Shown here: in pieces, positions 19,591 through 59,000 of the stretch | How the letters are laid out: each line of letters starts with the position of its first letter | How positions within the stretch are numbered: the stretch's first letter is position 1 | Origin: Pecten maximus | Lineage: Eukaryota | DNA: 64,000 nucleotides | Direction: 5' to 3' | NCBI RefSeq assembly: GCF_902652985.1 | Contig: NC_047015.1 | Location: 49,724,001-49,788,000, forward strand | Notes under the pieces: model-generated | What the model was told of the DNA's origin: nothing | The model's database searches: none | The model's input: the letters and a program-made list of their open reading frames with translations, nothing else | Made by a program: the position numbers and the translations under genes

Positions 19591-21982
19591 TTATCCGACG
19601 ACTGTACTTGGAGTATTCTTCGCTAATGATGGGAGGTATTGGTTCCAGAACTGGACCCTGTCAAGTGTCACGTGATATTGTGGTGATATATTGCTGTCAA
19701 ACCGTTGGTAGAGCCCAGCTACCTGGTCGTATCTTGGCCAATGAGGAAGACCAGGACCATTTGGTGAACTGTAAACAAAAACAACAGATACAAGATTATT
19801 GTTTCATAAAATTATGATTTCTATAGGAAAAGGAAAACTGGATTTCAAATTTGTGTCAGTATGATTTATATTGCATGTGTTGTGATATGATAGACAGAAA
19901 TATCATAGGGAAATATTCATATCGTCTCAGTCTTTTTATGTGGTACGAATATTATTGATTAGATATCAAAACAATGTACAGTGATCGGTAGCATATTTTA
20001 CATGAAAGGAATTTATTACATAAGAAAAACTGAGACAGTAAAAACAAACAGAACACAACGTCATACATCATTAAATCATACGACGTAAAAATTGCTAGCT
20101 GTTTTGATATCAAATGCTGTAAACGTATATATTTTAGCGGGGAAATTGTTTTAGTGATTTTTCGCTCTGAAAATATTACACTTGATTACGATTCTAATCG
20201 GAACGTCTATATAACATTTTGCATATATAGTGGATGCATCCATTCATAAATAAGCCAATGTCAGATTTTTTTTAATGCTTAAATTCCTTTGTGGTCGATG
20301 GGGAGTGGTAATTGGATATTCTACAGAAACTGGTTATTACAGTTTTCCTACATAGCGAAAGTTCCATGGGATAATTTCGAAACAGTAACTATCATGCACT
20401 TTGAAACTTGTATTGAATTTGTTCAGAAAAGAAACATTACAAAGCAATGCATAGCTTACCCAGTCTTAGCGAAATTTGCCCAGTATGTCATCATGATCAA
20501 AGACAGCACTGGGTCATCTGCTTTGGAACCAGCAAACGAGAACAAATAGGAAAGTTCAGCGGCATGGCTTGCCCCAGTGAACCAAGAAGGGCGTTCGTTC
20601 GTACTCTTTGGTTCCTTGGTGAACATATACTGAAATGTATTCCTGCCCATGGTCAATCCAGGAGATGAGTGGCAGTCGAGAGTGCTGACCGTAGGGGCTA
20701 CCATAATGCCATCTGTGTACAGGTTGATGACACTTCTGCTTTGCTCAATGTCATTAATTTTGCTGTATTTTTGACAGATGGCGTCAGCAGCGGCCATGTT
20801 TCCCTCGAAGAGGTCTTTCGCATACTCCGGAGAAAGAACATCACATAAAAATCGAGTTGGTATACCAAGTGAAACATTAAAATTATATTGACGTTCTAAA
20901 TCATTCATATTGATGTCCAGCAGTATTGAACCTTCAGCGTCTGTATTGCCAAACATAGCATCCAAGGTTCGGAAAAAACAGGAGCCCTCTGAAGAGATAT
21001 TTGCCATCACATCTACGGGAAAAGCTTTAATAAGATCACCATCAACTACAGGTGCATCTCTCATTGCTATTTGATTGTCTCTATACTTTCCTTCATTTAA
21101 ATCCATTTGGGCTTGTATAATTTCTGCAGCGGATTTTCCTCTCAAACACTGAACAAGGACGGATGAGTCGAAATTTGCATCATGTTCATTTATGCAATGA
21201 AGGAAAATACCATATCCTCTAGACACCTTCTTAGCCTCTAAACTCATTGATGAAGGAGAATTAGCAGGTCCACTTTCACCGATAACGCGTTGGAATAGTC
21301 CATGGTTTTGTGGATTAAGAGCATGCAGAGCAACACTCATGGAGCCAGCTGATTCACCGAAAAGTGTAATTGAGTTCGGATCCCCACCAAATGCAGCGAT
21401 ATTTTGCTTTACCCATTGAATTGCAAGCCGCTGATCCCACAGACCGTAATTTCCCAACGAAGCATCGTCCATTGTACTCAGAAATCCGAGAAGTCCTAAA
21501 CGATAATTCACCGTGACAACAATAACATCTCCTACATTAGTGAGAGGTGACGCATCGTAAATGGTGCCTTGGCCAAATATATATCCCCCTCCATGTATCC
21601 AGATCATTACACTTTTTTTGTTTGTTAGGGAAGCATTGTATGGTGTGTACACATTTAATTGAAGACAGTCTTCCGACCTTTGCCTATTTTCGAGTATGTT
21701 TGAAATATATTTTGGATCTTGCATACATGACGGTCCGAACGATGTTGCATCCAGGACGTTTGTCCAACTACCAAATGGAACTGGTTTTCTAAGCCTCAAG
21801 TTTCCGACAGGTGGTTTTGCATAAGGAATATTTCGATACTGATATACTGAGTGATTCCTGTTCTGAATGGCAATGCCTCTGACGGGTCCAGATGGAGTAC
21901 GCAGCGTCTTGTAAGTTACACCATTTGCTACACTTACAAAGACTGCCACTAACGGTAGCCAATTGGCCTTGTACACCATCAT
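19591..21982 (-). CDS. Carboxylesterase type B, paralogue A (intact, secreted); coding exons 21982-20460 and 19768-19591
   Basis: Signal peptide MMVYKANWLPLVAVFVSVANG; SEDCLQLN, WIHGGG, FGESAG (Ser), NTDAEG (Glu), GASHAAEL (His). Phase-2 intron after FAKTG. Terminal exon SPNGPGLPHWPRY...DRVQFWN...TPSTVVG*. Confidence 0.93.
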
Positions 21983-22586
21983 ATTTTCTGAATAATCGGA
22001 AACGAAAAGTACACTTATAATATCTTTCATTCATTATTCAATATTTATCTCCGCATATATCTTTAATTCGAATTGGTACCTGTATCATTCCCTTTCGCTC
22101 TTTGTGCTCCCGGAAAGGGTCATGACAAAATCGAAAGCTCACTTTCCACATTCTTGTGGAAAAACAAATAAACTAGTTGCTTACTTTGTTCTTCAAACAA
22201 ATCTTGAGGTTGACATATAGAAAAATTGTCGGATTGTCGATCCTATATAGCCGTTAAAAGAAACACATCAGCTTAAAGATATTTGATGTTTTTTTCTTAC
22301 ACCAACCGAATTGCTAGTCGCTAGTCTTTGATTTTGTCATGGCATTCCAGAGGAGCAGAAAGTGAGAGTCAACGTTACCCCCGGAGTGGAAAAGCATGTT
22401 AACAGTCCCATAAAATGTTATACATCATCTGGGAACGGGGTGACGCTATGAGAAGGAAATCTCAATCGGAAAATGTTACAGCGCATTGTAACATGGAATA
22501 TTAGAACAAATGTAAAACTTTTTTAGGTTCATAATCAAAACATTTTATCAAACATTGTTAACTCAAGATATTACTTAAGGCCTTAC

Positions 22587-22670
22587 CTTTGTTGGTAATT
22601 CCGGTCTTATTCAGTCTCAAGGGACAACTGGCAGATATCGAGTTGGTAGTAAAGGTCAATATATAGATCA
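22587..22670 (-). promoter_or_regulatory. Putative core promoter and non-coding exon 1 of esterase A
   Basis: Minus strand: ctatatat TATA-like (~22660), ccagtt Inr-like ~30 bp downstream, AG|GTAAGG donor at 22587/22586. The block is conserved upstream of B (30782-30865). GATA motifs lie nearby. Confidence 0.55.
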
Positions 22671-22789
22671 GTCGCGATAACATTTGACCCATCGTTATCT
22701 TAGCTTGCTGGTTAATTTAGATTCATGAGAATGTCCCTGTGGTTACAAATATTGTAGGTCAGGAGAGAAAACATCAGAAACTACTCGTT

Positions 22790-26412: not shown

Positions 26413-28803
26413 TTATCCGACGACTGTACTTGGAGTATTCTTCGCTAATGATGGGAGGTATTGGTTCCAGAACTGGACCCTGTCAAGTGTCACGTGATAT
26501 TGTGGCGATATATTGCTGTCAAATCGTTGGTAGAGCCCAGCTACCTGGTCGTATCTTGGCCAATGAGGAAGACCAGGACCATTTGGTGAACTGTAAACAA
26601 AAACAACAGATACAAGATTATTGTTTCATAAAATTATGATTTCTATAGGAAAAGGAAAACTGGATTTCAAATTTGTGTCAGTATGATTTATATTGCATGT
26701 GTTGTGATATGATAGACAGAAATATCATAGGGAAATATTCATATCGTCTCAGTCTTTTTATGTGGTACGAATATTATTGATTAGATATCAAAACAATGTA
26801 CAGTGATCGGTAGCATATTTTACATGAAAGGAATTTATTACATAAGAAAAACTGAGACAGTAAAAACAAACAGAACACAACGTCATACATCATTAAATCA
26901 TACGACGTAAAAATTGCTAGCTGTTTTGATATCAAATGCTGTAAACGTACATCTTTTAGCGGGGAAATTGTTTTAGTGATTTTTCGCTCTGAAAATATTA
27001 CACTTGATTACGATTCTAATCGGAACGTCTATATAACATTTTGCATATATAGTGGATGCATCCATTCATAAATAAGCCAATGTCAGAATTTTTTGTAATG
27101 CTTAAGTTCCTTTGTGGTCGATGGGGAGTGGTAATTGTGTATTCTACAGAAACTGGTTATTACAGTTTTCCTACATAGCGAAAGTTCCATGGGATATTTC
27201 GAAACAGTAACTATCATGCACTTTGAAATTGTATTGAATTTGTTCAGAAAAGAAACATTACAAAACAGTTCTGAGCTTACCCGGTCTTAGCGAAATTTGC
27301 CCAATATGTCATCATGATCAAAGACAGCAATGGGTCATCTGCTTGGGAACCAGCAAACGTGAACAAATAGGAAAGTTCAGCGGCATGGCTTGCCCCAGTG
27401 AACCAAGAAGGGCGTACGTTCGTACCCTGTGGTTCCTTAGTGAACATATACTGAAATGTATTCCTGCCCATGGTCAATCCAGGAGATGAGTGGCAGTCGA
27501 GAGTGCTGACCGTAGGGGCTACCATAATGCCATCTGTGTACATGTCGATGACATTTCTGCTTTGCTCAATGCCATCGACTTGACTGTATTTTTGACAGAT
27601 GGCGTCAGCGACAGCCTTGTTCCCATTGTAGACGTCTTTCGCATATTCTTGAGAAAGAACATCACATAGAATTCGAGTTGGTATACCAAGTGAAACATTA
27701 AAATGATATTGACGTTCTAAATCGTTTATGTTGCTGTCCAGCAGAAGTGACCCTTCAGCGTCTGTATTGCCAAATATAGCATCCAAGGATCGGAAGAAAC
27801 TGGAGCCCGCTGATGAGATATTGGATATTACATTTTCGGGAAAAGCTTTAATAAGATCGCCATCAACTACAGGTGCGTCTCTCAGTGCTATCCTATTGTC
27901 CGTATACTTTTCTTCGTCTAAATCCATTTGAGCTCTTAGAATTTCCGCAGCGGATTTTCCTCTCAAACACTGAACGAGTAAAGATGAGTCGACATTTGCA
28001 TCATGTTCATTTATGCAGTGGAGGAAAATACCATATCCTCTAGACACCTTCTTAGCCTCTAAACTCATTGCTAAAGGAGAATTAGCAGGTCCACTTTCAC
28101 CGATAACGCGTTGGAACAAGCCTTGGTTTTGTGGATTAAGAGCATGCAGTGCAACACTCATGGAGCCAGCTGATTCACCGAAAAGTGTAATTGAGTTCGG
28201 ATCCCCACCAAATGCAGCGATGTTTTGCTTTACCCATTGAATTGCAAGACGCTGATCCCACAGACCGTAATTTCCCAACGAAGCATCGTCCATTGTACTC
28301 AGAAATCCGAGAAGTCCTAAACGATAATTCACCGTGACAACAATAACATCTCCTACATTAGCGAGGGATGATGCGTCGTAAATGGTGCCTTGGCCCAGAA
28401 TATATCCCCCTCCATGTATCCAAATCATCACACTTTTCCTGTTCGTAGGAGAAGCATTGTATGGTGTGTACACATTTAATTGTAGACAATCTTCAGACAT
28501 TTGCCTATTTTCGAGTATGTTTGAAACATATTTTGGATCTTGCATACATGACGGTCCGAACGATGTTGCATCCAGGACATTTGTCCAACTACCAAATGGA
28601 ACTGGTTTTCTAAGCCTCAAGTCTCCGACAGGTGGTTTAGCATAAGGAATATTTCGATACTGATATACTAATCGGTCTCTGTTCTGAATGGCAATGCCTC
28701 TGACGGGTCCAGATGGAGTACGTACTGTCTTGTAAGTTACGCAATTTGCTACACTTACAAGGACCGCCACTAACGGTAGCCATATTGCCTTGTACACCAT
28801 CAT
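26413..28803 (-). CDS. Carboxylesterase type B, paralogue B (intact, secreted); coding exons 28803-27281 and 26590-26413
   Basis: 508-aa exon ORF with signal peptide, FGESAG, NTDAEG and GASHAAEL; close paralogue of A; C-terminus TPSTVVG*. Confidence 0.93.
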
Positions 28804-35268: not shown

Positions 35269-37277
35269 ATGAGGATGTTGATTCTAATATGGCTTCTATC
35301 GATGTCAGACATGACGCCGGATGTGAATAGTCAAATGAACAAGAAGACTGTTGACACACCGTTAGGACCTATAACGTGATTGACGACGCCCATTCAAACT
35401 GGAAGTATATCTCAATTCCGCAAAATCCCTTACGGGAAAACACCTGTTGAAGACCGAAGATTCAACAAACCGGAACCGTTCGGAAAATGGACTGGAACAT
35501 ATGATGCAACGAATTTTGGCCCAAACTGTGTGCAGGATATGAGTATATCATTCAGATCTGGGGATAATTTTCTTCCCAACTATGGAGTGTCCGAAGACTG
35601 CTTACATCTTAATATTTTCGTTCCAACATCAGCGTCGCCCACAAGCTTGAAGTCGGTAATGGTGTGGTTGTACGGGGGTGCTTTTGTGTCCGGACAAAGT
35701 GGTATATACGATGGTTCTGCTTTGGCCTTCAATGGTGACGTAATTGTGGTTACTTTGAATTACCGCATTGGTCTCCTGGGATTCTACAGCACAGGAGACG
35801 AAGCTGCACATGGTAATTATGGATTGTGGGACCAGCTTCTGGCATTGCATTGGATCAAAGACAATATTAGGGCGTTCGGAGGTAATCCGAATTCAATAAC
35901 AGTATTTGGCCAATCTGCAGGATCCTTGAGTGCTTCAAATTATGCTCTGAATCCAAGAAAATAAAGGAATGTTTCACAGGGTGATTCTTGAGAGCGGGAC
36001 AGCAAATCAGGTAGCTGCATTCAATCTTGAAATAAATGCATATGCCAGAGAGTACAGCATTCTATTAAATTGTACAGATAAGGGCATTAATCATCCTAAC
36101 ACTACAGAAATGGTGGAATGCATGCGTACTAGATCGGTGAAGGAAATTATAAAAAGTCAGCAAGACCATGTCGTCAAAACATACGCTAATTTCGTCCTCG
36201 ACTTTAGTATATTCCCTGTTGTGGATGGAGAACTAATTCCAATACACCCAAAAATTATTTTAAAGAATACCTCATCTCCAGCATACAAATTCCTACAGTC
36301 TCTTGATGTTATTGGAGGAACAACCAGCGGTGAAGGTTATTTGTTGCTAGATTACCATGGCAAAAGCATGGAAAGACTTTGGGGACTTAACTTAACAGAA
36401 GGCCTATCAACTGCCGATTTCTGTTCCAGGATAGCACCAGAAATGGCCAATGACTTCTACCACAGCCATCCGCATGTGGCCAATGACATTTGTCAGATGT
36501 ACAAGTCGGGTGTAAGTGATCAGGACCAAGCCCTGAATGTTACAAAGGCGTATGGTGATATGATAATGCAGGCACCAACTGTTTCGTTCCTAAAACGCCA
36601 TGCTAAAAATAACAATCAGACCAAAACCTTTCAGTATCTTGTATCCCATGGAAATTGTATCACCAAAGTTCGCCGGGATCCACCCTGGTTCAAGGGTGTT
36701 CCTCATGCTGGTGAACTGCCCTACTTGTTTCGGCCAAAGTTCATTGGAATACTCATCGATACTTGTCCCGAAGACATCTTATTGTCGGCTAAATTTATCA
36801 AGTACTGGAGCAATTTTGCCAAGACTGGGTATGTCATATCGCAATTACTTCAATTGAATGTTGTTTTTAAATCGCAGAGTTATATTTTCGTCATTTCTTT
36901 GTTTGAGGTTCTTATATTTTGTTGGACATAAAAGGTACTTCATCCATCCAATTAATCTAATTTATTATAATTCCGTACATGATTATTTTATCATCTATTT
37001 ATTTTTCAACAGTAATCCGAATGGTCCTGGTTTACAACAATGGCCATTGTTTGATCTGAGAAGGTTTGGGTACCTGAACTTCGATAATAATATCACTGAC
37101 CAAAAAAAACTCTATTGGGACCGGGTTCAATTTTGGAACTACCAAATCGATAGACAACAGAACGCAACGTATGATAATGATTCACAACTTAACAGGAGCA
37201 ACCCCCAATTCCATCAATATGGCATCATCATCTGCTTTGTTACAGCACTGCTCGTGTTCCTTCTGTTTGTGAGATGA
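35269..37277 (+). pseudogene. Carboxylesterase paralogue C (GPI-type tail), disrupted; exons 35269-36828 and 37013-37277
   Basis: ATG 35269 with signal-like MRMLILIWLLSMS. TGA at 35377-35379 replaces a conserved Gly (GPIT*L). Extra A near 35960 in NPRNKG. Triad GQSAG/TTSGEG/GVPHAGEL is intact. Tail ...NRSNPQFHQYGIIICFVTALLVFLLFVR*. Confidence 0.85.
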
Positions 37278-40838: not shown

Positions 40839-42357
40839 ATGGAACGTAGCGTTCTGATGTATCTGTTCCTTTCGGCTTTTGTGTGCGATGGTTTATGTTC
40901 CAACTATAAAACAGTGCGAACTCCGTCAGGACCCGTCAAAGGAATTGGTATACCTTATAATGGTGATATGGTGTTTCAATACCGTAATATCCCATATGCT
41001 GAATCTCCGGTAGGTGATTTGAGACTACAGAAGCCGGTACCACACGGAACATGGACAGACGTTTTGGATGCGACAACATTCGGTCCTTCCTGTATTCAAG
41101 ATGTTGCCCGAATAAAAAGTTTAATACCGAAACTGCCGAATTCTAATTTTTCTGAAGACTGTTTGCAACTCAATGTGTATACACCAAACATTGTTTCAAC
41201 ATCACAAAACAGAAAGAGCGTCATGATATGGGTTCATGGAGGAGCTTTCATGTTAGGACATGCCACGTATTATGATGCATCTAATATTGTATCCAAGGGA
41301 GACGTCATACAAATTCTTCCGGTCTTTAGACATTATATATGGCACATGTAGCAGTGAAGGTTTGGTTGCAACTATTATCGCTGATGGTCTTCAGAAGAAA
41401 TACGGGTTCAATGCAACGCTTGAAATACCTACCATTGTTTTACGTGACGAGTTTGCACCAACAATTTCTCATTATTACTATAATAGCAATGAGCATGTGT
41501 CCCGCGCTATCTATGACAAATACACTAGCAAGGATGCACTTACACAGAGCAAAAATATGATAGATGTGTTCACCGACTATATATTTCTTGCCTCGACAGT
41601 AAAAGCACTGAACTCACATTCATCAACCGGTCTTGCCACAGGAGGAAACACTTTCCAGTTCATATTTTCAGCACATGGTGTTTTGAAAGGGTATGTTGTT
41701 CCCGTCTATTTAGAAGGAGCGTGGCATGGGGCCGAACTTCCCTTCTTGTTTGGTCTAGATGGTCAAGGAGTTGTTGTGAACAAAACTGCAGATATCAACG
41801 CTGTAACAAACACAATGATTACATATTGGACAAACTTCGCCAAACACGGGTAAGTGGTTTCGGGAAAATCCTAAATATGAAATTAAACCGTGTCAATTTA
41901 TCTCAACTGAAATATCCTACCATACTCACAGTCAAATGTACAAATAGGCTTCAATATTGGAGGTTTCGGGTCTTTCTGTGAGCTGGGACAGCTTTTATAA
42001 TTTTGCACCACTTCCGGTAACACTATGCGTTGAAACTGTCAGTTAAATAAAAAAAATACACTAATAATAATTTCAAAATACCGTTAAGATTGTCACTAAT
42101 GAATTATTAAGGTATGTATGTTGCAAAAGTGTTATGAAAATATATACATATGTGTGCATTGTGCATAATTATTCAGAAATCCGAATAGCCACGGACTTCC
42201 TGATTGGCCTGTGTATAATCCGGTGACAACCGAGTATCTGAACATCAACACAATAATGTCCACAGGAAGTCACGTGGCCGAGGACAGAATGAGGCTATGG
42301 AACTGGTACATCCCGTCACTGCTAAAGCTTCAAACGAGCGCAATTTTAGGAAAGTAA
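40839..42357 (+). pseudogene. Carboxylesterase paralogue D: near-identical copy of F with a 536-bp internal deletion that removes the catalytic Ser
   Basis: Junction gacgtcATAcaaattc at 41307-41309 joins F positions 48113 and 48649 and shifts the frame. Terminal exon 42177-42357 ends QTSAILGK*. Confidence 0.92.
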
Positions 42358-43467
42358 CAAAGCTTTTGATTGATGCCAGGTCGATGATTTCAAATCTCAT
42401 TACGCACTGTAGACTTGAATGACACGTAGTTATCAATTGACGTACAATACAGTGACTACTGATGTTGTTATGCAAACGAGGACTTTGAATATTATTTCTA
42501 GTTTAGGAATCGAATAAACGTTGTTTATATACTTCAATGTTTGTTACATAAACATGACGGGAAGCTTTCTATTAACAAATTAAATGCATCAAATTTTTTA
42601 TAAATAAAAATAATGTTGAATGGCGTTTTCGATGTTCTGTTTACTTTTGGGTGGACTTCGCTTGGTTCGGGTTAGAAGGGGATAACGTTCGTAGTACGGC
42701 TAATTTGATGGGGTCGTAGTATAAGTAGAATGGAATACGAAACGAACAGTATAACCATCATAGTATAAGCTATGACAAAATGACAAAACAGGATGGTTAC
42801 TAAAGAAAAATGTCCTTGTATATCATACATGATATTTTGTGCAGCAAAATATTTATTATCATAGTGATTTTTTTTATTTATTATTTGTTTACAGTTATAC
42901 ATTTTTTGATATTATCATCATTTTGAATCTTAATCTTAATTTCCGAAATGACTTGAATAGTACTATGGTTTATTGTGCATTATCAACATTTTCCCTTAAA
43001 ATTGAGTCATTCTAAAACAATAAACATTGATTGCTAATTTTGATTAAAATACCTTAAAATAGGAATTGAAGAAATTCGAGGAAGAAGTTGTTTGGTCATA
43101 AAACATGGATAATGTCTCAGTATCAGATACCGGCGTGCTGTGTCATTATTTAGATAGTAATACACACATAATCTAGCAGCTGTGTTTTCCGCTACCTGTA
43201 CGGTAACACGGAATGCTACGATAATCGAATTTAAAACGACAAAAAGAGAAAAGGCAAACTTAATATTTTATTGATCTTCCTAACAGCATAATAGTTAGCA
43301 ACTGTAAAAATATGTCATGTACACCTGTTTGTCCAGGTTTATTTGTTGGTATAGAGTGTTAATAGTTCATAATGTCAAAAATTATGTACGACGAACAAGT
43401 TATCAACATATCTTAAGTGTGCATGCTGCCATACACGTAACAAATAAATATAATGGATATCAGAGGT

Positions 43468-44718
43468 ATCTTGAAATAAAAAAAAACATATGTCAGAGAG
43501 TACGGTATTCTATTAAATTGTACAGATAAAAGCATTAATCATCCCAGAACTACAGAAATGGTGGAATGCATGCGTACTAGATCGGTGAAGGAAAGTCAAG
43601 ATCATGTCGTCAAAAAATAAGCTGATTTCGTTCTCGACTTTAGTATATTTCCTGTAGTGGATAGAGAACTAATTCCATTACATCCAAACAAATTATCAAT
43701 AATCCTCATCTCCATCATAAAAAATTCCTACCATCTCTTGATGTTATTGGAGGAACAACCAGCGGAGAAGGTTCTTTGTTGCTAGATTACCATGGCCAAA
43801 ACATGGAAAGAGTTTGGGGACTTAACTTAACAGAAGGCCTATCAACTGCCGATTTCTGTTCCAAGATAGCACCAGAAATGGCCAAGGACTTCTACCACAG
43901 CCATCCGCATGTGGCCAATGACATTTGTCGGATGTACAAGTCGGGTGTAAGTGATCAGGACCAAGCCCTGAATGTTACAAAGGCGTATGGTGATATGATA
44001 ATGCAGGCACCAACTGTTTCGTTCCTAAAACGACATGCTAAAAATAACAATCAGACCAGGACCTTTCAGTATCTTGTATCCCATAGAAATTGTATCATCA
44101 AATTCCGCCGGGATCCACCCTGGTTTAAGGGTGTTCCTCATACTGGTGAACTGTCCTACTTGTTTCGCCCAAAGTACATTGGAATACTCATCGACACTTG
44201 TCCCGAAGACATCTTATTGTCGGCTAAATTCATCAAGTACTGGAGCAATTTTGCCAAGACTGGGTATGTCATATCGCAATTACATGTACTTCTATTGAAT
44301 TTTGTTTTTAAATCGCAGAGTTATCTTTTCTTCATTTCTTTGTTTGAGGTTCTTATATTTTGTTGGACATAAAATGTACTTCATCCATCCAATTAATCTA
44401 ATTTATTATAATTCCGTACATGATTATTTTATCATCTATTTATTTTTCAACAGTAATCCGAATGGTCCTGGTTTACCACAATGGCCATTGTTTGATCTGA
44501 GAAGGTTTGGGTACCTGAACTGCGATAATAATATCACTGACCATGAAAAACTCTATTGGGACCGGGTTCAATTTTGGAACTACCACGTCGATAGACAACA
44601 GAACGCAACGTATGATAAGGATTCACAACTTAACAGGAGCAACCCCCAATTCCATCAATATGGCATCATCATCTGCTTTGTTACAGCACTGCTCGTGTTC
44701 CTTCTGTTTGTGAGATGA
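43468..44718 (+). pseudogene. Carboxylesterase paralogue E: 5'-truncated duplicate of C
   Basis: Begins mid-exon relative to C (36024) and lacks the signal peptide and GQSAG. Stop near 43618 plus indels. Retains the intron and hydrophobic terminal exon. Confidence 0.92.
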
Positions 44719-47221: not shown

Positions 47222-47389
47222 ACACGTGTCCCGCGCTATCTATGACAAATACACTAGCAAGGATGCACTTGCACAGAGCAAAAATATGATAGATTTGTTC
47301 ACCGACTATGTATTTCTTGCTTCGACAGTAAAAGCACATTCATTAACCAGTCTTGCCACAGGAGGAAACACTTTCCAGTTCATATTTTC
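47222..47389 (+). other. Inserted 168-bp copy of esterase D/F coding sequence upstream of the F coding exon
   Basis: Matches 48835-49011 with a 9-bp deletion; absent from the paralogous region upstream of D (~40580-40610). Confidence 0.88.
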
Positions 47390-47644
47390 CATGAAAATCT
47401 AGGTCTAATCTAGGCAAAGTCTCGTTTGAAGTTATTTGTGTTATAAAGTCATTACAAGATGTGAGATAAACTAAAATACTCATAATGTGAAATTGTGTGC
47501 TTGTTTGTGTTATAATTATGAAAACTTCATCTTTATCACTGTTAATACTAAGTTTGGCTAAATAAACGCCTTCATTTAAATCAATTTTTTTTTGTTTAGT
47601 GTTTATGAAAATATGATTTTATATCTATTCCAGAAACGACGACA

Positions 47645-49703
47645 ATGGAACGTAGCGTTCTGATGTATCTGTTCCTTTCGGCTTTTGTGTGCGATGGTTT
47701 ATGTTCCAACTATAGAACAGTGCGAACTCCGTCAGGACCCGTCAAAGGAATTGGTATACCTTATAATGGTGATATGGTGTTTCAATACCGTAATATCCCA
47801 TATGCTGAACCTCCAGTAGGTGATTTGAGACTACAGAAGCCGGTACCACACCGAACATGGACAGACGTTTTGGATGCGACAACATTCGGTCCTTCCTGTA
47901 TTCAAGATGTTGCCCGAATAAAAAGTTTAATACCGAAACTGCCGAATTCTAATTTTTCTGAAGACTGTTTGCAACTCAATGTGTATACACCAAACATTGT
48001 TTCAACATCACAAAACAGAAAGAGCGTCATGATATGGGTCCATGGAGGAGCCTTCATGTTAGGACAAGCCACGTATTATGATGCATCTAATCTTGTATCC
48101 AAGGGAGACGTCATAGTTGTCACAGTGAATTATCGTCTTGGAGCGCTTGGATTTTTCAGTACAGGTGACGATGCGGCAAGAGGGAACTTTGGTCTTTGGG
48201 ATCAAAGACTAGCATTCCAATGGGTGAAAGATAACATCGCATCCTTTGGTGGCGATCCTGACACGATGACCATATTTGGACAATCTGCTGGGGCCTTTAG
48301 TGTTGGTATCCACGCAACGATACCTCTGAACAGAGGATTATTTACACGGGTGATTTCTGAAAGTGGAGGACAAGGTTCAAAAATATCAGTCCGACAAGAT
48401 GCAGATCTCATCACATTCGAATACGGTCGAAAGATCAACTGTATTACAGGGGCAGATAATCACATTGATATGCCGACACTCGTTCAATGCCTTAGGAGGA
48501 AAACTACTGATGAAATAATGGATGCTCAAACAAATCTGAACTCTTCTTTGTATGGAGGTGATTATGGCATCGAATTCATGCCAGTTGTTGATGGAACTCT
48601 GATAAAAGCCTTGCCTGATGTTTTAATTTCAAATTCAACATCTGAAGAATACAAATTCTTCCGGTCTTTAGACATTATATATGGCACATGTAGCAGTGAA
48701 GGTTTGGTTGCAACTATTATCGCCTACGGCCTTCAGAAGAAATACGGATTCAATGCAACGCTTGAAATACCTACTATTGTTTTACGTGACGAGTTTGCAC
48801 CAACAATTTCTCGCTATTACTATAACAGCAATGAACACGTGTCCCGCGCTATCTATGACAAATACACTAGCAAGGATGCACTTACACAGAGCAAAAATAT
48901 GATAGATTTGTTCACCGACTATGTATTTCTTGCTTCGACAGTAAAAGCACTGAACTTACATTCATCAACCGGTCTTGCCACAGGAGGAAACACTTTCCAG
49001 TACATATTTTCAGCACATGGTGTTTTGAAAGGGTATGTTCCTCCTGTCTACTTGGAAGGAGCATGGCATGGGGCCGAACTTCCGTTCTTGTTTGGTCTAG
49101 ATGGTCAAGGAGTTGTTGGGAACAAAACTGCAGATATCAACGCTGTAGCAAACACAGTGATTACATATTGGACAAACTTCGCCAAACACGGGTAAGTGGT
49201 TACGGGAAAATCGTAAATATGAAATTAAACCGTGTCATTTTATTTCAACTGAGCTATCCTACCATACTCACAGTCAAATGTACAAATAGGCTTCAATTTT
49301 GGAGGTTTCGGGTCTTTCTTTGAGCTGGGACAGCTTTTATAATTTTGCACCACTTCCGGTAACACTATGCCTTGAAGCTGTCAGTTAAATAAAAAAAAAA
49401 ATACTAATAATAATAATTTCAAAATACCGTTAAGATTGTCACTAATGAATTATTAACGTATGTATGTTGCAAAAGTGTTATAAAAATATATACATATGTG
49501 TACATTGTGTATAATTATTCAGGAATCCGAATAGCCACGGACTTCCTGATTGGCCTGTGTATAATCCGGTGACAGCTGAGTATCTGAACATCAACACAAT
49601 AATGTCAACAGGAAGTCACGTGGCCGAGGACAGAATGAGGCTATGGAACTGGTACATCCCGTCACTGCTAAAGCTTCAAACGAGCGCTTTAATAGGAAAA
49701 TAA
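47645..49703 (+). CDS. Carboxylesterase type B, paralogue F (intact, secreted); coding exons 47645-49191 and 49523-49703
   Basis: Signal peptide MERSVLMYLFLSAFVCDGLC; SEDCLQLN, WVHGGA, FGQSAG, CSSEG, GAWHGAEL; C-terminus QTSALIGK*. Confidence 0.94.
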
Positions 49704-51317
49704 CCAAGCTTTTGATTGAACCTGCCATGCCGATGATTTCAAATCTCATTACGCACTGTAGACTTGAATGACACTCAGTTATCAATTGACGTACAATACA
49801 GGGACGGTGCTGATGTTGATATGCAAACTTGGACTTTGATTATTATTTTTAGTTCAGAACTCGAATAAAAACTGTATATTCTTCAATGTTTGTTACACAA
49901 GCATCACAGAAAGCTTTCTATAAACAAATCAAATGCATCAAAAATGTCTTAGAAATAAAAAAAAAATAATGTTGAATGGCATTTTCGATATTCTGTTTAC
50001 TTTTTGGTGGCCTTGCACTTGGTTCGAGGTTAGAAGGGGATAACGTTCGCAGTAATGGGGTCGTGGTAAAACGTAGAACGGAATACGAAACACAAGGTAA
50101 CCATCATAGTATAAGCTATGACAAAATGACAGAACAGGATGGTTACTGAAGAAATATATATATGTTCTTGTATATCAACAGCATAATTTATGCAGCAAAA
50201 CTTTATGATTATTTTTTTTTTCTGATACATTTTTTGATATTGTTACAACTTTTAATCTTACAGTAATGGTTTAGAAAGTACTATGAGTTATGATACATTA
50301 TCAACAATTTTTTTCATTAAAAAATAATTAAAAGACATGTTCCATAAAAAAATCGGGAAAGAAGTTTTTGTTGATGAAACATCTTCTCTTATAAAATTTT
50401 CGCTGAATATTGATGGCTATCAAACCAATACTGTCAATTGGCAAAATGGGCGCAACGATATCCGTTTATCTAGCTTGGTCAGATAACCATAAGAACTGAT
50501 AACAATAGATATCTCAGTATTAGATACCGGCGTGCCGTATCATTATTTAGATAGTAATGCACATATAATCTCACAGCTGTGTTTCCCGCTACCTGTACGG
50601 TAACACGGAATGCTACGATAATCGAATTTGAAACGACGAAACGAGGAAAGGTAAACTTGATATTTTATTGATCTTCCTAACTGCTAAACGGTTAAAAACT
50701 ATAAACATATGTCCTGTACACCTATTGGTACAGGTTTATTTGTTGGTATAGAGTGTCATTAATTCATAATGTCAAAATTATGTACGACGAACAAGCATCA
50801 ACATATCTTAAGGGATGCATGCTGTCATACACGTAACAAGTAAATATAATGGATATCAAAGGTATCTTGAAATAAATGCATATGCCAGAGAGTACGGTAT
50901 TATATTAAATTATACAGATAAAAGCATTAATCATCCCAACACTACCATATACGTAATATGTAAATATAATGGATAACAGAGGTATCGTTTTTTTCTATTT
51001 TACTAATTCAAACATGTGGATGTTAAAAGTGAAGTTATTTTATAAATAATTCCACTTCATCATTTGCTACAAGAATTAAAACTGTTAAACGTAAAATATT
51101 AATAAAATTCTAACATATATCATGCTCATTAGTTTATTAGCAATCAGCTCTTACGGAATCTGGATTCATTTCAATTGAGGTGTTATTTATTCAACCAAAT
51201 AATTTTTTCCATGACAGAAGTCATAAAGACATTATAACCTTTTAAATATCGAATTCGCGTCTTGGTTTCTTATCTCCAACATAGCAACAAATATTTGAAA
51301 ATGAATTAAATCTACAG

Positions 51318-53651
51318 ATGTGCGCAGGACTGCTGGTGATAATGATTGTTTCCACGACAGCAACGTTAGCGAAAAGTCTTACTCTTCCCGTCGTTCAAAC
51401 ATCCCTAGGATCTATAAGGGGTGTTACAACAAGGGTTGATAATGAAAAAATATTAGAATTCAGAGGAATTCCGTTTGCACAGCCTCCAATCGGAAAATTC
51501 CGTTTCCGAAAACCTAAAGCACGTGGACCTTGGAATGGCACATTAGATGCCACCGGTTTTGGGCCGGCATGCATACAGAAGATTTCTGACTCTATATCGT
51601 TATTACCGAATATGGAAGTCTCTGAAGATTGTTTAACATTAAATATATATGTCCCTATGGAAATATCGTACAGTAAGAGGAAAAGTGTAATGGTGTGGAT
51701 TCACGGGGGAGGTTTTTATAGTAGTCAAGGTTCTTTGTACAACGGAACAAAACTTGCCTTATATGGAGACGTGATTGTGGTGACAATAAACTATCGTCTA
51801 GGAGTGTTAGGTTTCCTCAGTACAGGTAACGAGGACCTTCCCGGAAACCTAGGACTCTGGGATCAGCACCTTGCTCTACAGTGGATCAAAGACAACATAT
51901 CATCATTCGGGGGAAATCCTAACTCAATTACTTTATTCGGAACATCCTCGGGTGGAGCTAGTGTTTCTTTACACTCTCTCATCCCTCGTAACAAGAACTT
52001 GTTCCACAGGGTTATTGCCCAGTGTGGAATTGCGAATTCATACCTTGCCTTCGTGTATGAACCTTGTATTATGTAAATATGCTCGGCAAAATATTGGCCT
52101 GTGGGAATGGCACCGAAGTAGTTGACACAAAACTATTGGTGCATTGTATAAACAAAACCTCAGCAGACGACATCTTGGCAGCTCAAGAGGCTATGTCGTG
52201 GCATCGGAGGGACAGGGCACGCTATGAACTGATGTTTGGGGCAGTGGTGGATGACGATCTCTTTACACATCATCCCGAGGAATTACTAAATGACAAAACG
52301 TCTGCCTCATTCCAGCTTTTCCGATCTGTAGATTTTCTCGCAGGCGGGACAGACAAGGAGGGATCCATGTTCTACGACATTTTCTCTGGAATGTTGTCGG
52401 AAATGTTCAATATTAGCCCTGCGGGTGGCTTTCCAGCAGAAATTGTGTGTGAATTCTTGATCCCTGGTTTAGTAAAAGATTTGTTTCCAAATTGTTTGCA
52501 TAAACGGGTTCTAGAGCAAGCAATTTGTCATAAGTATCATGGAAATGATGACCGTTCGCGTGCAAGTAAAATGCTTGATTTATACGGGGATGTCTTGTTC
52601 ATCATTCCTGTTGTCAAATGGCTTGGTGCACACTCCAAGGAAAATTCAATGACGTCTAGCTACCAATACATATTTTCACGACATTATACTTCCAAGATGG
52701 ACTCAACATTACCTGAATGGTTCCATGGCACCCCTCACACGGCCGAAAAACCACTCCTGTTCCAAGGGATCCATGAACCCAACAACGTTTTGAATGGTAT
52801 AGAAGATTTAACACTATCTAAGAAGATTATAACATTTTGGACTAACTTCGCAAAATACGGGTGAGAATTTATTTCTGCAAGGTTTGTATATATCTTATGG
52901 TTCAAACATCAATGAATATTCTTCGGTATTCTTCATGTAAGACGAAAGTTGTCTGCCACACAGCTTTGGATATTTTTGAAATTTTACGTTGGACAGAAAT
53001 TTCATATCATTCAACGCAGATGTAGTTATATGACCAGATCTATTGATATGTCAAATTTGGTTTCGCTGTGTATTCGAAAAATTCGGTAGAAAGTACGTTC
53101 CCCATTTACGTAAATTTCGAGCCCCATTGCATCGCGATTGTGTAACCTTTGCACCTTTGAAGCCAGGAACGACAATTAAATATTGTAAATATGTCATAAT
53201 TTATTTTTGAGTTATCCACATATGAGTTCAAGGTTTATACAAAAGTATGTACATGTACACATAAATATATATAAATGACGATTATTTCGAGACGTTTCAA
53301 CAAATTAATTTGCTATGCGCCAGTTGATATTTTTAATAACACTTTTTGCTTGATGTAAAATCTTAAAACGAGAAATATATAATTGGTTTGGAAAATGTGA
53401 TATCATTCTACTGACCTTTTCTAAAATTCTTAAGAATTCTGTCGCACTTTAAAAATCATCCGTTATGTTTCAGAAACCCAAACGACGGAACATTTCCCGA
53501 CTGGCATACCTTCAACGACAGTGACAGACACTTTTATAACATAAGCTACAAGCCATCCTCTTCTACACATGTTTTCCGAGACAGAGTCTCGTTCTGGATG
53601 TTAGAGGTTCCCGAAATCATCATGGCGTCGTGTCATCACCAGGAGCTGTAA
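51318..53651 (+). CDS. Carboxylesterase paralogue G, ER-retained type (HQEL); one 1-nt frameshift at ~52064; coding exons 51318-52860 and 53474-53651
   Basis: Signal peptide; FGTSSG, GTDKEG, GTPHTAE. Adding one T at 52064-52065 restores YEPLYYVNMLG, matching HQPLIFTGSFG in H. Terminal exon ends ...IMASCHHQEL*. Confidence 0.8.
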
Positions 53652-53829
53652 GATGGTTGCTTGCTGTGAAATGTTGGAGATATAAATTTATACAACGTAT
53701 AACTATTGTTTAATTTCATCATTCAACATAAATTATAGATTAGTACTGTAGGTACAATTGTATCATGGTAGTTTAGTTTTGTGTGGTATATAGTAGATAC
53801 AGCATTTTTAGCAACAGGTGTAAGTTTTG

Positions 53830-54739: not shown

Positions 54740-54955
54740 CTGTAAACGTGCATATTTTAGAGGTAATATAATTTTAACGTTTTTTTCGTTGAAAGCCGTA
54801 CCTGCACTTAATTATTATTGCGCTGATTTTCTTATATTGTTTTATATGGGAACTATCATTACTGCACTAATTCATCATTGTTTTAATCTGTTTGGATTTC
54901 AATTATTTTGGGGATACGATAAAATTTGAGTACGCCAAAATTAATGTGTTTACAG
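54740..54955. mobile_element. Short Tc1/mariner-type MITE relic
   Basis: ctgtaaac...gtttacag(ta) termini. Related left ends occur in the A/B last introns (~20118, ~26939). Confidence 0.45.
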
Positions 54956-55881: not shown

Positions 55882-58264
55882 ATGATGCGACAAGGTGTGG
55901 TATATACAGTCTTGGTTTTTACGGTTCTGGTGGTTAAAATTACCGGACAAAACACGAAAGTCATCGCGACTGCCTCTGGACAACTGCAAGGGCTCGTGAC
56001 TTTAGCAAATGGCTCGACCGTTTACCAGTTCAGGAATATCCCATACGCAAAACCGCCTATAGGTGAACTTCAGTTCGCAAAGCCAGTCGAATATGGCTCT
56101 TGGACCGGCATCCGTAACGCAACGGCCTATGGTCCAGCATGTATTCAAGATGTCCCCAAGGGTAAAAACCAGAGCATTTCCGAAGATTGTTTGTCATTAA
56201 ATGTCTACGTTCCTGTGAGCACGGTTGGTAGAAGGACGGTTATGGTTTGGATACACGGTGGAGGGTACATCAAAGGGGACGCCGCCATGTTTGATGGATC
56301 ATATCTCGCTTTACGTGGTGACGTGGTGGTCGTTACAATAAATTATCGTTTGGGGGTCTTTGGCTTCCTCAGTACCAATAACACTGTTTTACCTGGCAAC
56401 AATGGCCTCTGGGATCAGCAGTTAGCACTGAAGTGGATAAAATCTAATATCAAAGCTTTCGGAGGCGATTCGGATTCCGTGACAATATTTGGTGAATCTG
56501 CCGGTGGGTTTAGTGTTGGAATTCAATCAATTATTCCCCAAAATAAAGGATTATTCCACAGAGCTATTGCTCAAAGTGGCGCAGCGCCCTCTTTCGTCAG
56601 CATTGTTCATCAGCCTTTGATATTCACTGGTTCGTTTGGGGAACGAATCGGGTGTCATTTCAATTATACAAACTCGCCGATGTTTTTAAAATGCTTGAAA
56701 ACCAAAACCGTTGAAGAACTCCTCAAAGCCCAAATAAACGCCTCGGCCCCTGTCTCAGTAGCGCCATTTACGTTTGGGCCTGTTATTTCTCCTGTTGTCG
56801 ACAGGGATCTGCTACCGGATGTTCCATCGGCCCTCCTGAAGAACAAATCATCGGAAGCATACAAATTCTTCCGGTCTCTAGACTTCATGGCGGGAAACGT
56901 TAACAAAGAAGGCTCAATTCTCATTAACAAATATCTTCGTAATTTCTCGCAGATTTTCCATTTCGACCCGGAAATGGGAGTCCCAAATTATGTTGTGTGT
57001 GACGTCTTGGCTCCTGCAGCTGTTAGCGCATTCTTCAAAAATATTGTTAAGAACAAAACGATTGAAAAAGAAATATGTGACAAATATAAAGACAATGATC
57101 TTGGGGAGGAAGGAAACAAAATGGGAGATCTATTTGGTGACGCTTTTTTCGTGGTCCCATCTGTAATAGCTCTCGATGTCCATTCTAATGGAAACAACGA
57201 AACCAATACATTCCAGTATATTTTCAACCGACGCAATCCTGCCATGAAGGGAAATGGTCCATATCCACAGTGGTTTGTGGGAACACCCCACGCGTCGGAT
57301 AACGTGTTTCTCTTTGGGATTCAGCAACTGGCACAGCGAATTCACGTCTCTGATGAAGATTTGGATCTATCTACGCATATGCAACAATCTTGGGCCAATT
57401 TTGCTAAAACTGGGTAAGATTCTGATTTTTTACGGGCCAAACCTAGCCTTGTGTCATATTACTCGTTACATCTGTAAATATCTGTACCACTAAACACTTG
57501 GTCTTGACACAAATACTCAACCCATTCATTAGTTTATTTATTATTTTTTCATTTTTTGTCAAGCGCCTGTCTTCGGCAGTATGCTTCAGTGAGGTAGCAC
57601 TATAAATCGGCAAAACTTCCGGCCTATCACAAGGAGACTTAACATAAACATACCGCAGCCTCTCAAAACACACATACGCACTCACCACACGCATGCATGT
57701 CGCACGCACGGGAGGCCGTCCTTAAATGACCTTAGCTGTTAATAGGACGTTAAACAAAATAAACCAAACTTTGAGAACTTCACTGTACACTATTTTTGTT
57801 TAGATTGAACAATATTTATTCATTACTCAAAATAGTCAATACATATACAAATATTTTTATGGGATGGGAAAACAAGCTTAGAGCTTATATTAATTCGTTT
57901 CCCATGTACATACACAAAGGCAAATATAAATATTCGGAACTGGAACACCTTACATCAATATGAAATGAAATAATAGTTAAATTTATATAATCATATTTTT
58001 GTTTTGCCTTTTTCTATCAACAAATCAGAGAGAAGTTACGTTGGCTAAATGGCGTTAATTAAATGCAACAAGATTACACCATTTCTGCTGTATAATTAGT
58101 AATCATGATTTTCAGAAAACCTTCTGCTGGTGGTTCTACGATTTGGCCGATATTATGACGGAATCAATCGAATGTACCTCAACTTGGATGACACAATATC
58201 TGTCAAGGAACACATCTTTGCTGATAGAGTTTCGTTTTGGACGGAGAAAGTGCCAATTTTCTGA
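55882..58264 (+). CDS. Carboxylesterase paralogue H; catalytic exon 55882-57413 intact, terminal exon from 58116 frameshifted
   Basis: Signal peptide; FGESAG, NVNKEG, GTPHASD. The spliced frame stops at 58156-58158 (WPIL*). The family motifs YLNLD...DRVSFW continue in the +1 frame to 58264. Confidence 0.8.
57560..57770 (+). mobile_element. 3' part of a tRNA-derived SINE (MetaSINE-like bivalve family)
   Basis: ttcagtgaggtagcactataaa core and ggaggccgtccttaaatgaccttagctgttaataggacgttaaacaaaataaaccaaac tail; related copy at 61180-61530. Confidence 0.65.
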
Positions 58265-59000
58265 AATGCTACATGAAACATACAATAAATAAGCTATACA
58301 TGCAATAATAATGAGTATTTCCACGCTTTCCTTGTCCTTATTTTAGAAGGGGTATGATGGCGTACAATGGAGCACCTATATTACAATTTGTCGCTTTGAT
58401 ACGATCTCAAAATACCATTCCGTGTCTATAAATAGTACGTATTGCAAAATATTGTTTGCATTTGACAGTTTGTTTTATTTACTTTTATCATTTTATGAGT
58501 TTTATGAATATGATGGAGACACAATTTGGTGTAGCCTACGTTATAAATACATATAAAAATTATGTAAATTTATACTGAATTATTAAAGTAGTATTATAAA
58601 AATGCCAATTAAACGTGTTGCTATTGTCCATTGTTAAAATACACGTTACTTTCAACAAACATATATATATAAATTACTATCATGTATTTGAAAAATACTT
58701 AATTTTAATTGTTGCTGTCATTTTATAAAGTAAAACAATTGTCAGTGATCTCACTTAAAATCTATCTAGTTTTGGAAAAAAAATGCCTTTGAAAAAACTT
58801 AAATGAGAATAAGACCAGGTGTTCCGGAAGAGGAAGGGTATTATGTTTCATCCACGACATCCGCCGTTCAGATCTCGTTAAGTCCATGAATACCACATCC
58901 TCTTAAATGATAATTAGGGCACTGACAACGGAACCACTAGTCATACACTACATCAACAAGCACCAATCACGTGTGAATTCGTATCGCACAACTTAGGACT

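What the first reader, a model, noticed from the sequence alone, without database searches (positions are those of the whole stretch)
19591..58346. Carboxylesterase cluster whose small terminal exon appears to act as an interchangeable subcellular address label
Seen: all eight loci have the same phase-2 intron at WxNFAKxG followed by a short terminal exon that is largely missing from the ORF track. Splicing by hand gives three classes of C-terminus: TPSTVVG* (A, B) and SAILGK*/SALIGK* (D, F); a small-residue site plus spacer plus ~18 hydrophobic residues (C, E; possibly relic in H); and HHQEL* (G). Known: HXEL retains mammalian CES1/CES2 in the ER lumen, and hydrophobic C-terminal signals direct GPI anchoring, as in the AChE-H form. 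Inference: one tandem array supplies the same hydrolase fold to the extracellular/luminal space, the cell surface and the ER. It would do this by gene duplication and terminal-exon divergence, whereas vertebrate AChE uses alternative splicing. This could be a layered detoxification or digestion system.
Basis: partly seen in the sequence, partly recalled or inferred. Interest (0 to 1): 0.8.

Follow-up and report, generated by a model that had tools for sequence, protein, structure and literature searches.

The report
Scallop esterase genes with different tails
This is a cluster of duplicated carboxylesterase genes in the great scallop whose proteins end either in a secretion-type tail or in an ER-retention signal, a pattern already known from mammalian carboxylesterase clusters, and the copies with a membrane-anchor tail are broken in this assembly.

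Summary
The window is Pecten maximus chromosome 1. It holds eight type-B carboxylesterase (PF00135) loci. RNA contigs confirm the junction for F and G.

Only A, B and F are intact in the reference:
- C has an in-frame TGA plus a frameshift.
- D lacks 536 nt, including the catalytic serine.
- E was born truncated by a 7.4-kb duplication.
- H has an extra A in its terminal exon.
- G has a 1-nt deletion in the reference, but another individual's DNA and an RNA contig carry the intact allele.

So the HHQEL gene is live, and its Mizuhopecten orthologue ends in QHQEL. The GPI-like tail exists here only on dead copies. H's ancestral tail is short (…KVPIF), not hydrophobic.

The terminal exon is not a pure label. 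About 41 of its codons finish the catalytic fold. Tail class follows the catalytic-exon tree, so it arose by divergence, not exchange.

All tail classes are common in annotated bivalve esterases. Secreted and ER-retained paralogues in one tandem cluster are known in mouse Ces1.

Verdict: real and mostly ordinary, a new member of a known kind.

The parts
20460..21982 (-). Locus A, main coding exon (intact; an upstream in-frame ATG lies at 22030)
   Evidence: ORF and Pfam COesterase 2e-126. 98% identical to P. maximus P0012. Donor GG|GTAAGC.
19591..19768 (-). Locus A, terminal exon, ends ...TPSTVVG*
   Evidence: Phase-2 acceptor and translation. 100% identical to the tail of P0012.
27281..28803 (-). 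Locus B, main coding exon (intact)
   Evidence: dN/dS against A is 0.27.
26413..26590 (-). Locus B, terminal exon, ends ...TPSTVVG*
   Evidence: Intron plus terminal exon are 98-100% identical to A's, against 87-96% in the main exon.
35269..36828 (+). Locus C, main exon, disrupted by an in-frame TGA at 35377-35379 and a +1 frameshift in an A-run near 35952-35957
   Evidence: RefSeq models only a 293-aa product starting at ATG 35969 (P0200).
37013..37277 (+). Locus C, terminal exon with a GPI-like tail (N-R-S, 7-residue spacer, 18 hydrophobic residues, R*)
   Evidence: No use in transcripts was seen and no database protein carries it.
40839..41849 (+). Locus D, copy of F lacking 536 nt (F positions 48113-48648, including the catalytic Ser); pseudogene
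   Evidence: D-derived DNA contigs laid on F skip 536 nt (table 5).
42177..42357 (+). Locus D, terminal exon, ends ...SAILGK*
43468..44263 (+). Locus E, 3' part of a C copy, truncated at the boundary of the 7.4-kb tandem duplication (the unit starts at C position 36024)
44454..44718 (+). Locus E, terminal exon. Its last 33 codons are identical to C's; upstream there are 7 non-synonymous and 0 synonymous differences
47645..49191 (+). Locus F, main coding exon (intact, transcribed)
   Evidence: RNA contigs in X6 and X10 cover it.
49523..49703 (+). Locus F, terminal exon, ends ...SALIGK*
   Evidence: The joint 49190/1 to 49522/3 (GT..AG) appears in two RNA runs and in no DNA run..
51318..52860 (+). 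Locus G, main coding exon. The reference has a 1-nt deletion after 52063. The allele with a T there gives an uninterrupted 573-codon ORF
   Evidence: The T insertion is present in X4 DNA (32.3/32.3) and X6 RNA (18.4/18.4) and absent in X1. ORF check.
53474..53651 (+). Locus G, terminal exon, ends ...CHHQEL* (KDEL-type ER retrieval motif)
   Evidence: The joint 52859/60 to 53473/4 lies in a 3190-nt RNA contig. The orthologue P0067 ends ...CQHQEL.
55882..57413 (+). Locus H, main coding exon (intact)
   Evidence: 100% identical to RefSeq P0121.
58116..58264 (+). Locus H, terminal exon. An extra A at 58150 gives a stop at 58156-58158. The conserved frame ends ...FWTEKVPIF* with its stop at 58262-58264
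   Evidence: The orthologues P0122 and P0123 read WPYYD...KVPIF.

Best explanation
This is an old tandem array of secretory-pathway type-B carboxylesterase paralogues on Pecten maximus chromosome 1. At least part of it is shared with Mizuhopecten.

Gene structure. Each gene has a main coding exon of about 1.5 kb and a terminal exon of 180-265 nt. D and F also have an acceptor 11 nt before the ATG, inferred from a RefSeq model, which implies a 5' exon. A phase-2 intron in the Gly codon of NFAKxG separates the two coding exons. The terminal exon encodes the last ~41 residues of the catalytic fold plus a variable tail of 7-45 residues.

How the tail would act. Every protein has an N-terminal signal-peptide-like segment, so the tail should set its fate in the secretory pathway (inferred, not tested).
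- G ends in HHQEL. It should be retrieved to the ER lumen by the KDEL receptor, as HXEL carboxylesterases are in mammals.
- A, B and F lack any retention signal. They end in two hydrophobic residues plus Gly (optionally Lys) and are most likely secreted or luminal.
- H's lineage ends in a very short ...KVPIF.
- C's lineage acquired a GPI-type signal.

How the tails arose. They diverged after whole-gene duplication and are inherited with the catalytic exon. There is no sign of exon exchange between classes.

State of the array. It is partly decayed in the reference individual. C, D and E are dead or were never complete. H is truncated. G carries a frameshift allele that other individuals lack.
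For: Identity and family: Pfam COesterase E about 1e-125 for A, B, F and H. A GxSxG serine and a hydrophobic N-terminus are present in A, B, F, G and H. Closest solved structures are CES1, pig liver esterase and AChE.

Species and locus: the genome is 918,306,378 bp in 3983 contigs and the window is C1:49724001-49788000. H is 100% identical to a P. maximus RefSeq protein on a 60,076,705-bp contig.

Intron and exons.

Transcription and splicing of F and G, and the intact G allele.

Terminal exon belongs to the fold: in full-length relatives the Pfam domain runs about 41 residues past the junction, and this stretch aligns to ordered residues of CES1.

HQEL conserved in the orthologue P0067, at 73-75% identity.

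Shared array: M. yessoensis F-like P0010, the A/B-F-clade short-tail protein P0006, and the G and H orthologues P0067 and P0122 all sit on one 564,533-bp contig.

Tail class clusters on the catalytic-exon tree: 9 changes observed, 26 expected from shuffled labels, 0 of 200 shuffles as low.

Tail classes are common in the family: of 118 full-length relatives, 36 are hydrophobic, 33 xxEL, 25 hydrophobic-hydrophobic-Gly(K/R) and 24 other.

Disruptions.
Against: No localisation was measured. SignalP, NetGPI and PredGPI could not be run.

Whether C's TGA and frameshift and H's extra A are fixed, polymorphic or assembly errors is therefore unknown. G's frameshift turned out not to be universal, which warns against calling C and H dead everywhere.

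X6 is labelled RNA only by guess. Its splice joints and empty introns argue that it is RNA.

The tree used the 'quick' method, and C sits on a long branch.
Confidence: 0.75

Rival explanations
1. One reading: this one array currently delivers the same fold to three places (secreted, GPI-anchored on the cell surface, ER lumen). On this view C is a working GPI-anchored esterase in at least some haplotypes.
For: C's tail fits the rule-of-thumb GPI signal: N-R-S small residues, a 7-residue polar spacer, an 18-residue hydrophobic end. Hydrophobic tails of the same form are common in intact bivalve relatives, including P. maximus P0130 and P0189. A C-lineage protein from another organism, P0201 at 57% identity, is open across the region where C is frameshifted. 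G's frameshift proved to be absent from other individuals, so single-base defects in this assembly need not be fixed.
Against: C carries two independent defects, and one is a substitution-type stop codon. RefSeq models only a 293-aa N-terminally truncated product, spliced into D rather than into the hydrophobic exon. No protein in the word search or the 1.84-billion representative search carries C's tail. C has no other paralogue above 41% identity in the genome except E, and E was created truncated. C-E dN/dS is 0.59, and in the terminal exon the count is 7 non-synonymous to 0 synonymous. C sits on a long branch.
Confidence: 0.15
2. The terminal exons really are interchangeable modules, moved between paralogues by gene conversion or exon shuffling, so that the address is re-assigned independently of the catalytic exon.
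For: Between A and B the intron and terminal exon are 98-100% identical while the main exon is 87-96% identical. This suggests conversion of the 3' segment.
Against: That homogenisation is between two genes of the same tail class. Across classes, tail type follows the catalytic-exon clades. The conserved part of each terminal exon resembles that of the orthologue of its own main exon: A with P0012, F with P0002, G with P0067, H with P0122.
Confidence: 0.07
3. The tails are functionally neutral leftovers. HHQEL and the hydrophobic ends are accidents of where a stop codon fell, and all paralogues share one location.
For: No localisation data exist for any mollusc esterase in the papers searched.
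Against: The last four residues, HQEL, are kept in an orthologue whose preceding tail residues differ. 33 of 118 relatives end in K/H/R-x-E-L-type motifs, including a whole clade ending KTEL. [quoted passage not shown]
Confidence: 0.05

Closest known systems
Mammalian CES1/CES2 tandem clusters (mouse Ces1a-h, Ces2a-h): HXEL-bearing ER-resident members beside Ces1c, which lacks HXEL and is secreted (PMC5818367)
   Same: Same family (PF00135, best solved match CES1). Tandem duplication. A signal peptide, plus a C-terminal H-x-E-L motif that decides ER lumen versus secretion. Different fates among neighbours of one cluster.
   Different: Mammalian genes have 12-14 exons (PMC5818367). The scallop genes have almost the whole coding region in one exon. 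No GPI-type member is described in those clusters. The scallop short tails carry their own conserved hydrophobic-hydrophobic-Gly(K/R) ending.
Vertebrate acetylcholinesterase H (GPI) and T forms made by alternative 3' exons (own knowledge, not tested here)
   Same: Same fold. C-terminal peptides decide anchoring. A hydrophobic C-terminal GPI signal, as on C/E and on many bivalve relatives.
   Different: In AChE one gene chooses between separate tail-only exons that follow the complete catalytic domain. Here each gene has one terminal exon that also encodes the last ~41 residues of the fold. For F and G only one junction was seen in RNA.
Human BCHE gene layout: four exons, with a very long exon 2 (PMC5891924). 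From memory, a 167-bp exon 3 then finishes the catalytic domain
   Same: One long exon holds most of the catalytic domain, followed by a short exon of about 170-180 nt. From memory, the scallop intron at NFAKxG|xPN is the likely counterpart of that boundary.
   Different: BCHE has a further exon for its tetramerisation tail. Homology of the intron position was not tested here, because no vertebrate gene structure was available.
Annotated bivalve carboxylesterase/cholinesterase-like proteins (RefSeq models of Pecten, Mizuhopecten, Ylistrum, Argopecten, Mytilus)
   Same: A, H and part of C are already RefSeq models (P0012-like, P0121, P0200). Orthologues P0002, P0067 and P0122 show the same junction and the same tails.
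   Different: No RefSeq protein for G or F turned up in the searches. For G the reference frameshift may be the reason (inference). No paper found here discusses the tail classes.

Membership tests
Type-B carboxylesterase/cholinesterase family (Pfam PF00135) | Significant match to the COesterase profile over the whole domain | tested here: met
   A, B, F and H main exons give E 1e-125 to 1e-129 over profile positions 2-472 of 515. Full-length relatives reach 515/515 through the terminal-exon part.
Type-B carboxylesterase/cholinesterase family (Pfam PF00135) | Nucleophile serine in GxSxG | tested here: met
   GESAG in A, B and H; GQSAG in F and C; GTSSG in G. D has lost this region.
Type-B carboxylesterase/cholinesterase family (Pfam PF00135) | Catalytic Glu and His in register with solved enzymes | tested here: inconclusive
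   Motifs of the expected form (..AEGS / ..SEGL / ..KEGS and GxxHxxE) are visible in the translations. P0012 aligns end to end with CES1. I did not map the residues one by one.
KDEL-receptor-dependent ER-lumen proteins (HXEL carboxylesterases) | Entry into the ER: an N-terminal signal peptide | tested here: inconclusive
   G starts with a strongly hydrophobic N-terminus (10-residue Kyte-Doolittle mean 3.08). SignalP was not available.
KDEL-receptor-dependent ER-lumen proteins (HXEL carboxylesterases) | H/K/R-x-E-L as the last four residues of the mature mRNA's ORF | tested here: met
   G ends ...HHQEL* and an RNA contig uses this exon. HXEL is described as necessary and sufficient in mammals (PMC5818367).
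KDEL-receptor-dependent ER-lumen proteins (HXEL carboxylesterases) | Motif conserved in orthologues | tested here: met
   M. yessoensis P0067 ends ...CQHQEL, although the residues before it differ.
KDEL-receptor-dependent ER-lumen proteins (HXEL carboxylesterases) | ER localisation that depends on the motif | not testable with these tools
   Needs expression of tagged and tail-deleted constructs.
GPI-anchored proteins (C/E tail) | C-terminal signal: small omega, omega+2 residues, polar spacer, hydrophobic end with no cytoplasmic tail | tested here: inconclusive
   By eye there is N-R-S, then a 7-residue spacer, then 18 hydrophobic residues and a final R. NetGPI, PredGPI and big-PI were not available.
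GPI-anchored proteins (C/E tail) | An intact ORF with a signal peptide upstream of the signal | tested here: not met
   In the reference, C has a TGA at codon 37 and a +1 frameshift. E lacks its 5' half.
Alternative-terminal-exon addressing (AChE H/T type) | One gene spliced to two or more alternative tail exons | tested here: not met
   One junction each for F and G in RNA contigs. The only alternative seen is a RefSeq read-through of C's donor into D's main exon.

The most novel reading that the evidence does not exclude
The 'plain' tails may not be a default. In several separate bivalve clades the proteins end in two hydrophobic residues plus Gly, optionally followed by Lys/Arg (VVG, VLG, IFG, IVGK, LIGK, ILGRK, IVGRET), while the linker before them is unalignable. 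This could be a fourth conserved C-terminal signal. One possibility is a peptidylglycine-type amidation or processing site, or a sorting motif, on a 60-kDa hydrolase. In addition, the GPI-tailed C gene could be alive in other haplotypes, just as the HHQEL gene is broken in the reference individual but intact in others. The array would then be a segregating, three- or four-destination esterase system.
Probability: 0.2. Interest if true: 0.55.

Novelty: new member of a known kind. Interest (0 to 1): 0.3.

Why it matters
The finding shows that bivalve carboxylesterase expansions, which are often cited for detoxification and digestion, are sorted into ER-resident, secreted and membrane-anchor-type forms by short C-terminal tails. 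It also shows that one syntenic array mixes these forms. This is useful for annotating and interpreting esterase biomarkers in shellfish.

It also gives a practical warning. In this assembly three single-base indels sit in the esterase genes G, C and H. At least the one in G is not shared by other individuals, so calling genes dead or alive from the reference alone is unsafe.

The principle itself, paralogues of one cluster differing in an HXEL signal, is established in mammals. The result extends a known rule rather than opening a new one.

Tried and rejected
Reads. Only one sequencing-run run and one read-laying run were allowed, and I spent them on 47660-53655 (F and G). C, H, A and B were therefore not checked against reads.

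I could not fetch the DNA around the C-lineage protein P0201 to see its tail.

Pfam on terminal exons alone gave no hit because they are too short. I used full-length relatives instead.

Searches for C. The word search with C's 287-aa piece is limited to proteins of 158-502 aa. A full-length C-type protein of about 600 aa would be missed there. The representative search has no such limit and found only P0200 and P0201 above 50% identity.

Spliced models. Searches went exon by exon, by reference. Joined reading frames were checked only in local scripts.

Literature. Searches for mollusc or scallop carboxylesterase tails, and for the BCHE exon-boundary details, found nothing specific. The BCHE/ACHE intron comparison therefore rests on memory.

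Rejected readings:
- H as a relic GPI form. Its orthologues end ...KVPIF.
- The X4 loose end at 50864 as a structural variant. It is cross-mapping of C coding DNA onto an 82-bp copy.

Not run: structure prediction, complex prediction and the ESM atlas, because the fold is not in doubt.

Full report
WHAT IS THERE

The window is G000:C1:49724001-49788000 of a 918,306,378-bp assembly in 3983 contigs. Locus H is 100% identical to a Pecten maximus RefSeq protein on a 60,076,705-bp contig (P0121). Locus A is 98% identical to P. maximus P0012. The animal is therefore the great scallop.

Between 19.6 and 58.3 kb lie eight loci of the type-B carboxylesterase family. A, B, F and H give Pfam PF00135 E-values of 1e-125 to 1e-129. 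The closest solved structures are human CES1, pig liver esterase and acetylcholinesterases.

The array continues upstream of the window. One more full copy and an A-like fragment lie at C1:49698096-49702738. The genome holds at least 45 such loci, nearly all with the coding region in one long open frame. They form further clusters on C1, C14, C15, C18 and C7.

THE OBSERVATION

In all eight loci the main exon ends GG|GT inside the Gly codon of WxNFAKxG, which is phase 2. An AG acceptor 184-702 nt downstream opens an in-frame terminal exon.
- A and B: ...TPSTVVG*
- D: ...SAILGK*
- F: ...SALIGK*
- C and E: ...NRSNPQFHQ, then 18 hydrophobic residues, then R*
- G: ...CHHQEL*

Logan contigs of an RNA-type run (X6) and of a declared RNA-Seq run (X10) carry the F junction, 49190/1 to 49522/3. 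X6 also carries the G junction, 52859/60 to 53473/4, in a 3190-nt contig. Both junctions are GT..AG. Neither appears in the two DNA runs, which cover the introns.

The H 'relic' is not confirmed. In phase, the exon stops after 14 codons. The conserved reading lies one frame over and ends ...FWTEKVPIF*. The orthologues P0122 (Mizuhopecten) and P0123 end the same way. The reference has one extra A at 58150, after the codons for W-P.

- C has an in-frame TGA at 35377-35379 and a +1 frameshift in an A-run near 35955. RefSeq models only a 293-aa product starting after the frameshift. That model is spliced from C's donor into an acceptor 11 nt before D's ATG, so it ends ...NFAKTG-NDDNGT* (P0200 = XP_033753606.1).
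- D is F minus 536 nt, including the catalytic serine.
- E begins exactly where a 7.4-kb tandem duplication unit begins, at C position 36024. It was therefore never a complete gene.
- G has a 1-nt deletion after 52063. An independent individual's DNA (X4, 32.3 of 32.3) and the RNA contig (X6, 18.4 of 18.4) have a T there. X1, probably the assembly's source sample, does not (0 of 11.8). With that T the gene is an uninterrupted 573-codon ORF.

So G is a live, transcribed gene with a loss-of-function allele, or error, in the reference. Only A, B and F are intact as assembled.

WHAT THE TERMINAL EXON IS

It is not a pure label. In full-length relatives the Pfam domain runs about 41 residues beyond the junction. 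For P0012 the junction is at 508|509 and the domain ends at 549 of 566. The picture is similar for P0002, P0067, P0122 and P0130. This stretch aligns to ordered residues of CES1, where the motif WANFA(K/R)xG-xPNG-GLPHWP is nearly identical.

Only the last 7-45 residues are tail. The truncated H product in RefSeq (524 aa) therefore lacks part of the fold.

TAIL CLASSES IN THE FAMILY

Among 118 full-length relatives fetched here, most of them from bivalves, the counts are:
- 36 end in a hydrophobic segment.
- 33 end in K/H/R-x-E-L-type motifs (KTEL, HDEL, KEEL, RDEL, HQEL).
- 25 end in two hydrophobic residues plus Gly, with or without Lys/Arg.
- 24 end otherwise.

P. maximus itself has intact hydrophobic-tailed genes (P0130 at C1:39.65 Mb; P0189). 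It also has a KTEL cluster at C1:51.36-51.44 Mb.

DIVERGENCE, NOT EXCHANGE

On a maximum-likelihood tree of the catalytic exon (57 rows, quick method), tail class needs 9 changes against a shuffled mean of 26, and 0 of 200 shuffles were as low.
- A, B and F lie in a 12-row clade in which every member has a short tail.
- G pairs with P0067 (QHQEL), and H is sister to that pair.
- C is a long branch beside the short-tail clade.

Each terminal exon matches the orthologue of its own main exon. The one sign of 3' homogenisation is between A and B, which share a class. Their intron and terminal exon are 98-100% identical, against 87-96% in the main exon.

The M. yessoensis proteins P0010 (F-like), P0006 (short-tail, in the A/B-F clade), P0067 (G orthologue) and P0122 (H orthologue) all come from one 564,533-bp contig. 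At least part of the array therefore predates the Pecten-Mizuhopecten split.

HOW IT MOST LIKELY WORKS

Shown:
- The family, the gene structure and the splice junctions of F and G.
- Transcription of F and G.
- The intact G allele.
- Conservation of HQEL.
- The defects in C, D, E and H.

Inferred:
- All products enter the ER, because their N-termini are hydrophobic.
- G is retrieved by the KDEL receptor. [quoted passage not shown]
- A, B and F leave the ER.
- C's lineage was GPI-anchored. The rule-of-thumb signal is present but no predictor could be run.

The 'layered detoxification or digestion' idea remains speculation. The runs are coded, so no tissue can be named.

COMPARISON WITH WHAT IS KNOWN

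The closest precedent is the mouse Ces1 tandem cluster. There Ces1c lacks HXEL and is secreted into plasma, while its neighbours are ER-resident. CES4A and CES5A also lack the signal (PMC5818367).

The analogy with AChE H/T holds for the kind of signal but not for the mechanism. Here there is one terminal exon per gene, and it also encodes part of the fold.

From memory, the layout of one long exon followed by an exon of about 170 nt that finishes the catalytic domain resembles human BCHE. PMC5891924 confirms only four exons and a long exon 2. I could not test whether the intron is homologous.

I found no paper on mollusc esterase tails.

VERDICT

It is unsupported for the GPI arm in this array and wrong about interchangeability. 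The principle is already known, so this is a new member of a known kind, and interest is about 0.3.

Two things are worth a follow-up:
- the conserved hydrophobic-hydrophobic-Gly(K/R) ending of the 'plain' tails;
- the segregating loss-of-function alleles.

LIMITS

- Searches of spliced genes were done exon by exon, by reference.

Noticed in passing
window 19591-19620, 26413-26440, 42340-42357, 49686-49703; relatives P0002-P0013, P0041, P0044, P0051, P0068, P0071, P0078, P0080, P0083, P0086, P0113, P0114, P0126, P0134: 25 of 118 relatives, from several separate clades of the tree (scallops, mussels, a unionid), end in two hydrophobic residues plus Gly, optionally followed by Lys/Arg and a few more residues. 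The linker before this ending is unalignable. It looks like a conserved C-terminal motif and resembles an amidation signal (my recollection, untested).
   Followed up: partly
window 19591-20460 versus 26413-27281: The intron and terminal exon of A and B are 98-100% identical, while their main exons are 87-96% identical (dS 0.20). This suggests recent gene conversion of the 3' segment.
   Followed up: partly
window 52063-52064: The 1-nt deletion in G is absent from another individual's DNA and from RNA, but is present in the probable source sample. It is either a segregating loss-of-function allele or specific to that individual. No RefSeq protein for G turned up in the searches.
   Followed up: yes
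window 40828-40838 and 47634-47644: A splice acceptor lies 11 nt before the ATG of D and of F, which implies an upstream non-coding exon. RefSeq isoform X1 of C (P0200) joins C's donor at 36828 to D's acceptor. This is a read-through model ending NDDNGT*.
   Followed up: partly
window 36024-43467, 43468-50863, 50864-50945: A tandem duplication unit of about 7.4 kb starts inside C's main exon. It produced E (truncated from birth) and the D/F pair. An 82-bp third start of the unit, 91% identical to C coding DNA, lies at 50864-50945, as the scan's note s1-789220 said.
   Followed up: partly
G000:C1:49698096-49702738 (21-26 kb before the window); loci L007, L010: One more full esterase copy (57% identical to A, tail ...ASMVLG) and an A-like fragment with a frameshift. 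RefSeq P0001 (859 aa) looks like a chimeric model of the two.
   Followed up: partly
window 47223-47390: An isolated fragment 88% identical to F residues 398-456 lies just upstream of F. A matching piece is at 41494-41669.
   Followed up: no
window 49957: Four letters of the reference are left out in all four runs laid, including the probable source sample. This is likely a small assembly error in F's 3' UTR.
   Followed up: no
window 18968-19467: A 500-N gap lies 124 nt beyond the stop codon of A. A's 3' UTR and flank are therefore incomplete. I did not fill it or look it up.
   Followed up: no
window 14001-18000: A stretch with higher G+C (0.44 against about 0.35) and strong positive GC skew (0.27-0.30). 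I did not examine it.
   Followed up: no
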